Below, piece by piece: positions 22,363 to 27,063 of a stretch of DNA of 64,000 bases. The translations under genes and the position numbers were made by a program. The notes below the pieces were generated by a model. The model searched no databases. It was given only the letters and a program-made list of their open reading frames with translations, and had not been told where the DNA came from. Position 1 is the stretch's first letter, and each line of letters starts with the position of its first letter. The stretch covers positions 3,389,711-3,453,710 of the forward strand of contig JAWQFM010000001.1 in NCBI GenBank assembly GCA_033442325.1. The letters run 5' to 3'. This DNA is from Salpingoeca rosetta (taxonomy: Eukaryota; Protista; Choanoflagellata).

Positions 22363-24033
22363 ATCGACAGCCACAGCAACGCACCTGCCTGCTGGCACAA
22401 GCATCAAAACAGCAACGGCACCACCTACACAAGGCTTGTCAGCCGCGCTCCAGGCAACGTCGCTCAAGCCAGCCTCATCAGTGCCAGCCTCTTCTATCAC
22501 AACCAACGAGGAAGCGAACCAGAGCACAAAGACAAACGCAACAGCTCCAAGTGGTGCCCCGCCACCACCACCACCTCCTCCTCCTCCACCTCCACCTCCA
22601 CCACCAGCGCCTCCCGCACTGCCCACGGGCCAACTCGGGAGCACCGCTGGTGTGAAGCAGATGGGTCAAAGTGGCGGGAAGCCGGCCGAGACTGCTGTGC
22701 TGAACAAGTTGCAGCGTCGTCTGCGTGCTCGCATGCAGCGGCAAGCGCAGCACGGCACGACCGCTAACAAGGGCAAGCCTGCAGAGGACCCAAAGGTACG
22801 CACGCATATGATCAAGATGGATGTAGCAATGTGTTTGCTTGTTTGCTTGTTTGCTTGTTTGTGTGTTTGCTTGCTTGTTTGTTTGTTTGTTTGTAGTATT
22901 GTGTGTTTGTTTGTTTGTTTGTTTGTTTGTTTGTTTGTTTGTTTGTTTGTTTGTTTGTTTGTTTGTTCGTTTGTGTGTTTGTAGTATTGTGTGTTTGTTT
23001 GTTTGTGTGTGTGTGTGTGTGCTGGCCTGCGTGTCGTTGTTTTTAAATGTTTCCTTTCTCCACGCGCCAGGTCGTGGTGTCAGCCAACAGCGTTCCAACA
23101 GTTTCGCTAACGCTGCACTTGCTTATTGCTGGCTTGCTTGGTCTGATCACTGCGATTCTAGCTCGTGCGCTGGTTGGAGATCCAATCCAAGGCACGGAAA
23201 ATCACGCGAGAAGGTGTGTGCTCAAGCCTAGGCTTTCGTGTTGTGTTGTGAACAGAGCGTGTAACGTAAACCCTCAAGCAGACCATGTAATGGTCTGGCT
23301 CACTTTCCCTCTAGTTTATGCATAACCCGCTCCACACGCATGCATATGTGCTGCTGTGTTTGCCATGTCATCATCCACAGAGTTTGCCCAAATGGCTGCA
23401 TCCAAACGGGAGGAAGTACAGCAAACCCTCAAGCGGTTCATGCAGAACAACAGCGCTTCCTACGAAGAGGTGTGCATGCTCGTTTGTGGGTGTGTTTTGC
23501 TTGTGTGTTTTTGCTTGTGTATTTGCGTTTTGTATGTGTGTATGTATGTATGTGTGTATGTGTGTGTGGTGTTGCGTGCGTGCGTGTGTGTGTGTGTGGT
23601 GTTGCCTGCGTTGAGCTTGCATTTACGTGTGTATGTATGCGTGTGTTTGTGCTCGTACGTTTGCGTTTTGTGCTTGTGTGTACGTGTGTGTGTTAGCTTC
23701 TGAGTCTGAACAACAACAGTGTCTAGGTTTCGTGCGTTTATCATGAGAACAAATCACAGCTTGTCCAGTGGTGCTGACCTCATTATTGCTCTCGGTCCAC
23801 ACGTGAATGGCATGCAGGCATGCCAGGTTGTTGAGTCGCTCGATGGCTGCTCCCAGTGGTTTCCAGGCGGCACAAAGGAGATGAAGGAAAAAGTGCCCGT
23901 GTGGTGCCGTGCAGAGAAGCGTCTGGAAGCTTTTGTTGAGCACGTGCACGTCGTCAAAGACATGCGTCAGACACTCGAAACTCCCTTGCCAAGGTACATC
24001 CACGTGTGCTTGTGCGGGTGTGTGTGTGTGTGC

Positions 24034-24111
<78 letters not shown>

Positions 24112-24419
24112 NNNNNNNNNNNNNNNNNNNNNNNNNNNNNNNNNNNNNNNNNNNNNNNNNNNNNNNNNNNNNNNNNNNNNNNNNNNNNNNNNNNNNNNNN
24201 NNNNNNNNNNNGATCACCTCTAAGGCTGCTCACAGTGGTTTTCCAGGCGGGAACAAAGGAAGAGGAAGGAAAAAGCGCCCGTGTGGTCCGGAGCAGAGAA
24301 GCGTCTGACACCTTTTTGTAATGCCCGTTCCCGTCGTCAAAAGACATGATTCAACACTTCGAACTTCCCTTGCGAAAGGGACATCCACGTGTGCTTGTGC
24401 AGAGATGAGAGTGCAGGAC

Positions 24420-24464
<45 letters not shown>

Positions 24465-24949
24465 ATGTTTGCGGGTATGCACTCGCGGGTGCGCATCCAC
24501 GTGTACGTGTGCATGTGCGTACATGTATGCGTGTGCAATGATTGCTCGTCACCAACAGCCGACGCCTTTCATCCTGCAGCACCAAAGCTGTTCGTCTCTG
24601 ATTCCTTGTGTCCTTTTCGCTGCAATGACACCGTGTGCAGGTTGGAGCAGTTTGAGGCGGATTTGACGGCGTTGGCGGGCGTGTTCCATAAGAAGCGGCG
24701 CATGTGGGGCAGCGTGCTGTGCGAGAAAGCGCGCTCGTGGGCGGAGGCGGGCCTCTCCGTCGACACGCAGCTGCTGTCAGACGCACTCGCGCATCTGCAG
24801 ACAATCACGGTGGAGTTTGGCATGCGCATAATCAAGGACTACGAAAGCATGCAGCGCGCCGGCTATCGCTTTGCTCGTGCACGCCAGGTCTTGTTTGTTG
24901 TGTGTTGTGGAAAACGTACGCGTTGTACGCGTTGTACACGTTGTAGATG

Positions 24950-24989
<40 letters not shown>

Positions 24990-25637
24990 GTGTGGGTGTG
25001 TGTGTGTGTAAGTTACCTGACTCCACTCGCACCATCAACACTCACCATCACACGCGTGCACATGGTTTGCTGTTGCCTTTGCAGATCAAGCAGCTGCTTG
25101 CCGATGCGTTGCGCATGTGCAACGACTGCCTAGCACTCGGTATTGCAAACAACGAACGCATTCTTGCGCACGCCATGTCCATGTTCGTGCACACACTGCG
25201 ACTTTCCCTGGACATGTACCAGCACACCTTCCACGAGCAGCCGCGCGCCCTCGTCACACAGCACTTTGAGGACATTATCAAGGCCATGCAAGAGCTGCGG
25301 GTACGTATGCGCGTGGACATGCAACGTGATTGTGTGTATGTGCAATGTGTGAGCTGTGTGTGTATATGTGTTGATAAGCAAGCAGAGGAACACAGGCCTC
25401 TCTCTGCTGTGCAACGTAGTTTATCCTCTCACATCATGGCATGTACACGAATGCAGGATGTGTGTCAAAGAGTGCCACATTCCAACACGGCTGGCATGAG
25501 CTACCAGCACGCCAAGAACGCAAAACTGATTGAAGTTGTTGCCACACGCCCCGACGCGGCCGACCTCTTGTTCCAGTGCAGCAGGTGCGTGAGGGCTGTT
25601 TCCTTTGCTGCGTGGTTTTGTAGCGTTGCATGTGTTG

Positions 25638-25704
<67 letters not shown>

Positions 25705-26490
25705 ATTGAAATGCATTGTGGGATGTCAAGTTAAACTCCCTCACGGCCGGTGTTGACGCTCATACTGCCATGACTTGTGTGAACAACAATTGCTGCCTTG
25801 CAGGACACTGATGCAGCACATTATGCAAGCGAGCAAGGGCGAGCACACTCAGGACAACAAGAAGAACAACGCAAAGCACAGCGAGTGAGTCACCTGCTGC
25901 AGCTCTAGTGTGCGCGTGTGTGTGAATGAGTTTGGCAGTTGAGGTTGAAGCTGCACGTTCCAGCACCATAATTTTACGTGTGGGCACTCCCAGCCAGTCT
26001 CTAACACGCAAATGCCATTACTAATCACCACACCACGACGCAGGTCCAAGGATTTGATCCTTTGGCTGATGTTTGCGTGCAAGTTTGTCAACCGCACACT
26101 GGAATGCATGGGCCCAAGTATGCACACACTCGCGCGCGCACACACGCAGCAGCGAGTGCGCATTCATGTCAAACACACACACACACACACGCACACACAC
26201 ATACACACACACACACACACACAAATGCATGTGCATAAGCACTCGCACTTGCGCAAACATGCAAAGTGAAATGCGTCATTGCATGCATGCATGAATGTAT
26301 TGAGCTGCTCGCTCCATTCGTTGCCACGACTCATGGCATTCACATGTGCTTCCCCTCCTTCACAATCGCTGCCAACACACGTGCAGATGCAACCGGCAAG
26401 GACGCCCGCATGACGGAGATTCTGCAAACGCTGGAGACGATGGAGGTGCAGCTGCCAGACAACACCAACATCGGGGAGAGCGCCCTCTGA
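20175..26490 (+). CDS. Uncharacterised protein: D-box N-terminus, basic/SR region, polyproline tract, CHUP1-C-like helical domain
   Basis: Phase-consistent exons at about 20175-21106, 21601-21739, 22133-22795, 23162-23213, 23381-23469, 23818-23993, 24641-24887, 25085-25300, 25458-25584, 25804-25883 and 26387-26490. The gene is well supported; the family call is inference. Confidence 0.75.
21107..21335. repeat. (TG)n followed by a (GTGTGTGAAT)-type degenerate repeat
   Basis: Seen directly; begins at the donor GT. Confidence 0.95.
24112..24211. other. Assembly gap (100 N)
   Basis: N run flanked by (TG)n. Confidence 1.
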
Positions 26491-27063
26491 CATGATGACG
26501 GCAACAACAGACCACACCAGACACAATTGACCAACTCTGACTGCTGTCCAACCAACCAACCAACCACACAAACAACAACCAAACAACACAAACAAGCAAC
26601 CAAACAAACAACACAAACAAGCAACCAAGCACGAATCGTTGTTTGCGTGCGCACACCAATGACCGCTAGCTTTTTCTTCGCGTTATCATGACCCGTTCTC
26701 TGCGTTTGCTTCCATCTCTGTCCCCAAACAGAAAGTTTGCTCTCATTCACCACAGTAAAACTTCCCGCTCATGCAAACAGAGCCAAGCGCAGCATGCAAG
26801 CAAGCAAGCAAGGTGCATTGCATTGGTCTTCACTGCCGATCTTGTTCTCGTTCGTGCGTTTACAGCAGGAACCACCGCCGCACCATCACCATTGATCACG
26901 CCATCCACAACAAACACACGCACGCACCAAAACAGCGGCAACATTCTGCACAATCACCAGAAGTAACTTCATCATCACCACCACCAGCGAACCACGAGCA
27001 CAAACGCCACAAGCACAAACAGCACAGGTACACACACGCAGCGCGGGTACAGCGGGTGGCTGC

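What the first reader, a model, noticed from the sequence alone, without database searches (positions are those of the whole stretch)
22550..26490. Orphan protein resembling plant CHUP1: polyproline tract followed by a CHUP1-C-like domain
Seen: a run of about 16 prolines, then the spliced sequence WLEIQSKARKITREEFAQMAASKREEVQQTLKRFMQNNSASYEEACQVVESLDGCSQWFPGGTKEMKEKVPVWCRAEKRLEAFVEH...AGLSVDTQLL...ITVEFGMRIIK...TLRLSLDMYQHTF...KAMQELR. Known: CHUP1 is described as a plant actin polymerisation factor with a polyproline FH1-like region and a C-terminal domain structurally similar to formin FH2. Inference: my recollection of CHUP1 motifs (EIENRS..DFVQSL..EDLLAFVSWLD..WPEGKADAL..GIPVDWL..RFAFRVHQF..AFEELR) lines up in order and spacing. 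Canonical FH2 motifs are not visible. If real, this would be a non-formin actin nucleator in a close relative of animals.
Basis: partly seen in the sequence, partly recalled or inferred. Interest (0 to 1): 0.85.

Follow-up and report, generated by a model that had tools for sequence, protein, structure and literature searches.

The report
Choanoflagellate protein with CHUP1-like domain
This is a real, expressed gene for a 966-residue protein, shared by several choanoflagellates, in which a proline run sits in front of a helical domain whose predicted shape best matches the plant actin-assembly factor CHUP1; that suggests, but does not prove, that this "plant-only" machine also exists in the closest relatives of animals.

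Summary
A run of 16 prolines lies at 22559-22606. One joint (23993|24641) jumps the N gap, so the gap is intronic and the frame is continuous.

The gene is larger than the finding: 12 exons, 20175-26490, 966 aa.

It is not an orphan. Monosiga brevicollis MONBRDRAFT_25090, Salpingoeca punica, Mylnosiga fluctuans and at least two unnamed Logan samples (plus an 88-aa ENA fragment) carry the same family. Where the N-terminal side is known, the order is polyproline, short basic helix, linker, then a ~400-aa helical domain.

No Pfam family, FH2 model or PDB sequence matches, including the CHUP1 chains.

AlphaFold models of two family members are confident (pLDDT 86 and 92). The first ~230 residues of the domain superpose end to end on both CHUP1-C crystal structures:
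- Foldseek: TM 0.47/0.50, probability 0.98, E 0.17.

CHUP1-C is the only natural protein covering the whole subdomain at rmsd near 5 A, but Z does not rise above the helical-bundle background.

The last two do not.

Verdict: probably a CHUP1-type, non-formin cytoskeletal factor with an extra C-terminal module. Homology and actin activity are unproven.

The parts
20175..21106 (+). Exon 1 (ATG at 20175; aa 1-310). Disordered Ser/Arg/Pro-rich N-terminus with an RRAL..N motif near the start.
   Evidence: Sequence; model in frame; transcript contigs of X4/X5 cover 20560-21098 and continue into exon 2.
21601..21739 (+). Exon 2 (aa 311-357).
   Evidence: Contig pieces 21600-21736 joined on both sides; joint 21739|22133 is GT..AG.
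22133..22795 (+). Exon 3 (aa 358-578): polySer, polyPro and the conserved basic helix.
22559..22606 (+). Run of 16 prolines (aa 500-515), an FH1-like tract. Orthologues carry 1-3 such runs at the same place.
   Evidence: M. brevicollis. L006 has runs of 8, 12 and 7 Pro; L005 has a run of 10 or more.
22694..22756 (+). Conserved short basic helix (aa 545-565, VLNKLQRRLRARMQRQ), followed by a ~15-25 aa linker.
   Evidence: Alignment. In the P0003 model this is helix 3-18, followed by residues 20-28 with pLDDT<50. L005 has ISKLERRLRARIQRQ.
23162..23213 (+). Exon 4, a 52-nt micro-exon (LVRWLEIQSKARKITRE). The helical domain starts here.
   Evidence: Joints 22795|23162 and 23213|23381 are seen in reads and contigs.
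23381..23469 (+). Exon 5.
   Evidence: joints.
23818..23993 (+). Exon 6, carrying the family's LDG..W.PGG.K motif.
   Evidence: hhalign places CHUP1 WPEGKADAL on this motif.
24112..24211 (.). Assembly gap (N run), inside intron 6.
   Evidence: Joint 23993|24641 is seen in 6 raw reads and 2 contigs. RNA depth is zero over 24160-24559.
24212..24400 (+). Degraded, indel-ridden second copy of exon 6 and its donor, directly after the gap. Not in the mRNA; probably a low-quality contig end.
   Evidence: Local alignment to 23838-24012; no RNA depth.
24641..24887 (+). Exon 7, carrying W...aGL.vD..LL and the R.R.ARQ motifs.
   Evidence: hhalign places CHUP1 YKEFGIPVD on this motif.
25085..25300 (+). 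Exon 8. The CHUP1-C-like part ends at about aa 805 (nt ~25201).
   Evidence: The end of the superposition (P0004 residue 615) was mapped to the window through the alignment.
25457..25584 (+). Exon 9 (extra C-terminal helical module).
25804..25884 (+). Exon 10.
26044..26117 (+). Exon 11, carrying the most conserved family motif, WLMFACKFVNRTLECMGP.
26387..26490 (+). Exon 12, ending in the stop codon at 26488-26490.

Best explanation
An expressed 12-exon gene (20175-26490, + strand) encodes a 966-aa protein of a choanoflagellate-wide family.

Layout, from N to C:
- about 500 aa of disordered Ser/Pro/Thr/Arg-rich sequence;
- an FH1-like polyproline tract;
- a short conserved basic helix;
- a flexible linker;
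- a ~230-aa all-helical domain with the fold of the CHUP1 C-terminal domain;
- a further ~150-aa conserved helical module that CHUP1 lacks.

Most likely mechanism, by analogy with CHUP1-C and inferred rather than shown: the proline tract recruits profilin-actin, and the helical domain, probably as a dimer tethered through the short helix and linker, binds filament ends and promotes actin polymerisation. This would make it a formin-like but non-FH2 assembly factor.

Shown here: the gene, its splicing, its expression, its conservation, its architecture, a confident fold prediction, and an end-to-end superposition on CHUP1-C. Inferred: common descent with CHUP1, dimerisation, and any actin activity.
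For: Gene and splicing: all joints are GT..AG, in frame and seen in RNA.

Family: exon 7 alone finds P0003, P0004, P0005 and P0007 (E 1e-8 to 1e-4) among 1.84 billion representatives.
- P0004 is M. brevicollis MONBRDRAFT_25090, 33% identical over 769 aligned positions with the same layout.
- Salpingoeca punica and Mylnosiga fluctuans are members.
- L006 and L005 show polyPro runs directly upstream of the same basic helix.
- The gene is single-copy in its own genome.

Fold: the P0003 full domain gives pLDDT 86.4, pTM 0.79 and 15 helices. The M. brevicollis subdomain gives pLDDT 92.1, pTM 0.82.

CHUP1-C match:
- Foldseek 8waf: probability 0.98, TM 0.47/0.50, while the next best TM by query is 0.35.
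- Atlas searches give nothing above TM 0.40.
- Rival hits of equal Z either cover only residues ~100-250 of the subdomain or, where they span more of it, do so only at rmsd 7.6 A or worse.

Motif placement: hhalign puts CHUP1 W828... on WYPGG (model residue 67) and Y896KEFGIPVD on W..aGL.vD (residue 145). These offsets, 761 and 751, lie inside the 763-to-748 range set by the superposition. Both probes were verified as 100% CHUP1 sequence.

Architecture parallel: the CHUP1 paper describes a proline-rich region, then a short N-terminal helix, then a ~30-residue disordered tether, then the helical domain.
Against: - No significant sequence similarity. The family profile finds nothing in PDB sequences at E<=10, although the CHUP1 chains are in that library. 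Pfam finds nothing. The hhalign probe P-values are 0.17, 0.033 and 0.44.
- TM of about 0.5 and Foldseek E of 0.17 are borderline.
- The structures modelled are orthologues (33-34% identical), not the window's own spliced protein.
- Under an ungapped extension of the alignment, CHUP1 R820 (the actin contact) would face E, S or A in this family.
- IPGA1, a protein with the same plant C-terminal domain, is microtubule-associated.
- The extra 150-aa module has no CHUP1 counterpart.
Confidence: 0.5

Rival explanations
1. A lineage-specific helical scaffold with no descent from or functional likeness to CHUP1. The resemblance would be the generic look of stacked three- and four-helix bundles. The proline tract would serve as an SH3, WW or EVH1 docking site, and the long disordered N-terminus as a regulated adaptor region.
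Against: CHUP1-C was named before any structure was computed, yet it ranks 5th to 13th of 48,161 chains. It is the only natural chain covering about 80-90% of both partners at rmsd 4-5 A. Two motif probes land at the structurally predicted columns. The order polyPro, short helix, tether, domain is the same as in CHUP1.
Confidence: 0.3
2. A true relative of the CHUP1/IPGA1 C-terminal domain that acts on microtubules or as a cytoskeleton-organelle linker rather than as an actin nucleator.
For: IPGA1 shares the CHUP1 C-terminal region and binds microtubules. The actin-contact Arg of CHUP1 is not evidently kept (ungapped reading).
Against: The conserved polyproline runs directly upstream are the hallmark of profilin-actin delivery, as in FH1 and CHUP1.
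Confidence: 0.1
3. A CATCHR-like or MUN-like helical rod (as in exocyst, Munc13 and Tip20) acting in vesicle tethering.
Against: These matches either have rmsd of 10-12 A over long spans or cover only ~120-135 residues of one bundle. None covers the N-terminal 110 residues of the subdomain. No sequence family matches.
Confidence: 0.05
4. A highly divergent formin, with the helical domain being a degenerate FH2.
For: Only the FH1-like proline tract placed in front of a helical domain.
Against: The Pfam FH2 model finds nothing in the exons or the orthologues. Run over the whole genome, it finds FH2 pieces on five other contigs but nothing in this gene. No FH2 structure appears in any of five fold-search lists.
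Confidence: 0.02

Closest known systems
CHUP1 C-terminal domain (Arabidopsis CHUP1 residues 716/756-982; PDB 8WAG, 8WAF) and the plant CHUP1/IPGA1 family
   Different: Identity is 8-17% and there is no significant HMM match. The protein has no N-terminal hydrophobic anchor, coiled coil or F-actin-binding region like CHUP1, but a ~500-aa disordered region instead. An extra conserved ~150-aa helical module follows the CHUP1-like part. Equivalents of R820 and F958 are not identifiable. The host is a choanoflagellate, whereas CHUP1 is described as plant-specific.
Formin FH1-FH2
   Same: A polyproline tract N-terminal to a helical domain. CHUP1-C itself shares a three-helix core with FH2.
   Different: There is no FH2 sequence or structure match. 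The genome has canonical FH2 genes elsewhere.
Monosiga brevicollis MONBRDRAFT_25090 (uncharacterised protein)
   Same: Orthologue: same architecture, 33% identity over 769 aligned positions, and a shared N-terminal RxAL motif.
   Different: It is shorter (796 aa), has split proline runs, and has a C-terminal tail. Nothing is published on it.

Membership tests
CHUP1/IPGA1 C-terminal domain family | Significant sequence or profile similarity to CHUP1-C | tested here: not met
   hmmsearch of family profile A3 against PDB sequences gives no hit at E<=10, although the 8waf and 8wag chains are in that library. hhalign of three 30-aa CHUP1 probes gives P 0.17, 0.033 and 0.44.
CHUP1/IPGA1 C-terminal domain family | All-alpha elongated fold superposable on CHUP1_756-982 | tested here: met
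CHUP1/IPGA1 C-terminal domain family | Proline-rich (FH1-like) region immediately N-terminal to the domain | tested here: met
   16 Pro at 22559-22606. M. brevicollis, L006 (runs of 8, 12 and 7 Pro) and L005 (10 or more Pro) have it at the same place.
CHUP1/IPGA1 C-terminal domain family | Short N-terminal helix joined to the domain by a flexible tether | tested here: met
   In the P0003 model, helix 3-18 is followed by residues 20-28 with pLDDT<50, and the domain starts at residue 32. The helix is conserved in sequence.
CHUP1/IPGA1 C-terminal domain family | Functional residues R820 (actin contact) and F958 (dimerisation) | tested here: inconclusive
   No residue-level structural alignment was available. 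An ungapped reading puts E, S or A opposite R820. The F958 segment is not placed significantly.
CHUP1/IPGA1 C-terminal domain family | Dimer formation and profilin-dependent actin polymerisation | not testable with these tools
   This needs biochemistry: SEC-MALS, and pyrene or TIRF actin assays.
Formin (FH2, PF02181) | Match to the FH2 profile | tested here: not met
   No FH2 hit in the window exons or the orthologues at E<=1. The genome-wide FH2 scan hits pieces on five other contigs, none in this gene.
Formin (FH2, PF02181) | FH2 fold | tested here: not met
   No FH2 structure appears in the top 50 of any fold search.
CATCHR / MUN tethering rods | Series of CATCHR helical bundles matching along the whole rod | tested here: not met

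The most novel reading that the evidence does not exclude
The CHUP1-type actin assembly module (polyproline, tethered helix and CHUP1-C domain), published as a plant-specific fourth class of actin nucleator, is an ancient eukaryotic invention. It survives in choanoflagellates, the sister group of animals, fused there to an extra helical module, and works beside canonical formins.
Probability: 0.35. Interest if true: 0.8.

Novelty: new variant of a known kind. Interest (0 to 1): 0.62.

Why it matters

A choanoflagellate family with the same module order and a superposable domain would change that picture. The class would be either much older than plants, or acquired or re-invented in the lineage next to animals. 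Choanoflagellate actin structures (collar microvilli, filopodia) are central to ideas about animal origins.

The hypothesis is directly testable, because this appears to be a genetically tractable model choanoflagellate. The genome size of 55.4 Mb and RNA runs from 2011 to 2026 fit Salpingoeca rosetta, but that identification is my inference.

Even if the homology fails, the family is a conserved, uncharacterised, confidently folded domain placed behind an FH1-like tract.

Tried and rejected
1. Pfam on single exons and on orthologues found only sub-threshold noise (DUF6455, Med22, LisH).

2. phmmer of exons 6-8 and hmmsearch of the family profile against PDB sequences found nothing, apart from an SdeA hit at E 1.1.

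3. P0001, P0002, P0006 and P0008 from the representative search are long coiled-coil repeat proteins (4-27 matched stretches; Fez1, Sas-6_CC and Filament Pfam hits). I rejected them as compositional matches.

4. Language-model look-alikes reached at best 0.82 (strumpellin, WASH-4, CYFIP), which is below the usable range. The named-cluster search gave no usable hit.

5. ESM Atlas fold searches gave no TM above 0.40.

6. The homodimer test with complex prediction (two copies of P0003) returned no verdict (score 0.00; the partner's own fold was uncertain in that engine). This is neither for nor against dimerisation.

7. Three homologous-protein searches returned only choanoflagellate members. The window's own protein was never returned, so it could not be used by id.

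8. An alternative longer exon, 23071-23213 in another frame (a TM-like LHLLIAGLLGLITAIL), is rejected. RNA joints use the acceptor at 23162, and the alternative would shift the downstream frame.

9. The spliced window protein has no reference and was not typed in, so structures were predicted for orthologues P0003 and P0004, with the window's exons as alignment rows. Short exons misaligned in A1 and A4 and were dropped.

10. The third CHUP1 probe (residues 949-979) aligned best to the WLMFGCKF motif at P 0.44, which is uninformative.

11. A full CHUP1-C sequence was not obtained. Only three short motif probes were used.
Full report
**Observation**

The stretch is eukaryotic, with short GT..AG introns full of GT/CA and TTTG microsatellites. 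A run of 16 prolines lies at 22559-22606 (aa 500-515), followed by APPALP.

The frame stays open through ten exons to a stop at 26488-26490.

I laid two stranded raw RNA-seq runs and the contigs of two further runs on 20560-26550. All nine joints downstream of the proline exon are seen, each GT..AG.

The joint 23993|24641 skips 647 bases that include the N run 24112-24211. It has 6 raw reads from 2 start places plus contigs of two runs. RNA depth is zero between 24160 and 24559. Orthologues also align across this junction without a gap. So the gap is intronic, and the letters on its two sides are continuous in the mRNA.

Directly after the gap, 24212-24400 is an indel-ridden second copy of exon 6 and its donor. 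It is absent from the RNA and looks like a poor contig end.

**Full gene**

Transcript contigs join the proline exon to two upstream exons (21601-21739 and ...-21106). An ATG at 20175 opens the frame. The complete model has 12 exons and 966 aa.

The first ~545 residues are Ser/Pro/Ala/Thr/Arg-rich and look disordered. The last ~420 are Ala/Leu/Glu-rich.

Four positions in the CDS differ from the assembly in all RNA runs. Three are synonymous and one gives V823I.

**Not an orphan**

Because a spliced protein has no reference, I searched exon 7 (82 aa) against 1.84 billion representative proteins. Four true relatives came back (P0003, P0004, P0005, P0007; 36-39% identity). Four coiled-coil repeat proteins also came back, and I discard them.

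- P0004 is Monosiga brevicollis MONBRDRAFT_25090, 796 aa. It aligns with the window protein over 769 positions at 33% identity. Its layout is the same: disordered N-terminal half, proline runs, a short basic helix (MEQRLRSRITKK against LNKLQRRLRARMQRQ), then a ~400-aa conserved region ending in WLMYACRFVNKVLECFGP...LP.
- A profile search added Salpingoeca punica, Mylnosiga fluctuans and an 88-aa ENA fragment (P0010).
- The transcript contig behind P0003 carries three proline runs (8, 12 and 7 Pro) just upstream of the helix.
- A 35%-GC genomic contig from another sample (L005) holds an intron-containing orthologue with a run of 10 or more Pro and ISKLERRLRARIQRQ.

The domain is single-copy in the window's own 55.4-Mb genome. 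No paper mentions the M. brevicollis gene.

**Sequence-level family tests**

- Pfam finds nothing for the exons or the orthologues.
- The FH2 model, run over the whole genome, finds formin pieces on five other contigs and nothing in this gene.
- The family profile finds no PDB sequence at E<=10, although the CHUP1 chains 8waf and 8wag are in that library.

By HMMER there is no demonstrable sequence relationship to CHUP1, FH2 or anything else.

**Fold**

AlphaFold2 on P0003 (the whole 409-aa region, with a 10-row alignment including window exons) gives pLDDT 86.4 and pTM 0.79. The model has a short helix (3-18), a low-confidence linker (20-28) and then 14 helices. The M. brevicollis subdomain (P0004 383-632) gives pLDDT 92.1 and pTM 0.82.

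Foldseek of the whole model finds only designed helical repeats, cullin-N and MUN at E above 1e-3.

With the independent M. brevicollis subdomain:
- Foldseek ranks 8waf (CHUP1 756-982) 4th, with probability 0.98 and TM 0.47/0.50. No other hit exceeds TM 0.35 by query.

Hits of equal Z (STAT2, 14-3-3, designed bundles) cover only residues ~100-250. The few that span more of the subdomain (Legionella SdeC and some designed repeat proteins) do so only at rmsd 7.6 A or worse. CHUP1-C alone spans the whole subdomain at rmsd near 5 A. Atlas fold searches find nothing above TM 0.40. No FH2 structure appears in any list.

**How much weight this bears**

Three points argue against chance:
1. CHUP1 was named in advance from sequence motifs, yet it ranks in the top 0.03% of chains for two family members.
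2. Coverage is end to end for both partners.
3. Sequence and structure agree on position.
   - WPEGKADAL... lands on WYPGGSKQMK at model residue 67 (P 0.17).
   - YKEFGIPVD lands on W..aGL.vD at residue 145 (P 0.033).
- The implied offsets (761, 751) fall inside the 763-to-748 range fixed by the superposition. A random placement would land in a window of that size about 7% of the time for each probe.

The third segment (949-979, containing F958) is not placed meaningfully (P 0.44). The superposition ends at about aa 805 of the window protein.

**Mechanism**

The CHUP1 paper describes a proline-rich FH1-like region, a short N-terminal helix, a ~30-residue disordered tether and the helical domain. 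It reports dimers, profilin-dependent actin polymerisation, and roles for R820 (actin contact) and F958 (dimerisation).

The choanoflagellate family repeats that order of parts, which is why I favour a CHUP1-like, formin-like mode of action.

None of the activity is shown. The R820 equivalent is not evidently conserved. IPGA1, which shares the plant domain, binds microtubules. This family also has an extra, very conserved ~150-aa helical module.

I put the CHUP1-type reading at about 0.5, an unrelated lineage-specific helical scaffold at about 0.3, and smaller odds on a microtubule or linker role, a CATCHR-like rod, or a degenerate FH2.

**Limits**

The window's own spliced protein could not be handed to the structure tools, so orthologues stood in for it. 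No CHUP1 family alignment could be obtained, so the decisive profile-profile comparison remains to be done.

Noticed in passing
window 24212-24400: An indel-rich copy of exon 6 and its donor (23838-24012) sits directly after the N gap. RNA has no depth there. It is probably a low-quality contig end placed beside the gap, but it could be a real decayed tandem duplicate.
   Followed up: partly
window 20202-20231 (aa 10-19, RRALASISVN): The N-terminal R-x-A-L...N motif is shared with M. brevicollis (RKALQTRDLN, aa 4-13) in an otherwise poorly conserved N-terminus. It is D-box-like, but the Asn is one residue further out than in the canonical RxxLxxxxN. This fits the other first-stage note on this gene.
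   Followed up: partly
window 21886-21906 and 23675-23693: Raw RNA reads (50 in X16, 14 in X17) show a 'goes back 1808' joint from 23693 to 21886, with only 19-21 nt on the short side and GT-rich loose ends. Depth spikes in these intronic GT-rich spots. They are most likely reads from another GT-repeat locus rather than a back-splice.
   Followed up: no
window 25607-25894: One low-depth contig (X5, depth 4.3) skips 286 bases with CT..AC ends, that is GT..AG on the minus strand. This may be a spliced antisense transcript across exons 9-10.
   Followed up: no
window 22411, 23197, 25253, 26059, 26494, 26529: All RNA runs read another base than the assembly at these six places. Three changes are synonymous, one gives V823I, and two are in the 3' UTR. 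This is either a strain difference or base errors in the assembly.
   Followed up: partly
window introns, e.g. 21107-21340, 22006-22090, 22830-23020, 23990-24111, 24425-24465, 24950-25010, 25640-25700, 26150-26225: Nearly every intron of this gene carries a long (GT)n/(CA)n or (TTTG)n microsatellite. The assembly gap sits at the end of one of them.
   Followed up: no
L005:1-3938 (Logan SRR14727191) and L006:1-395 (Logan SRR28720669): An intron-containing orthologue lies in a 35%-GC genome, and a 65%-GC transcript has three polyPro runs. Both come from unnamed organisms, so the family spans very different base compositions.
   Followed up: partly
window 51096-51195: There is a second assembly gap in the window, outside this gene.
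   Followed up: no
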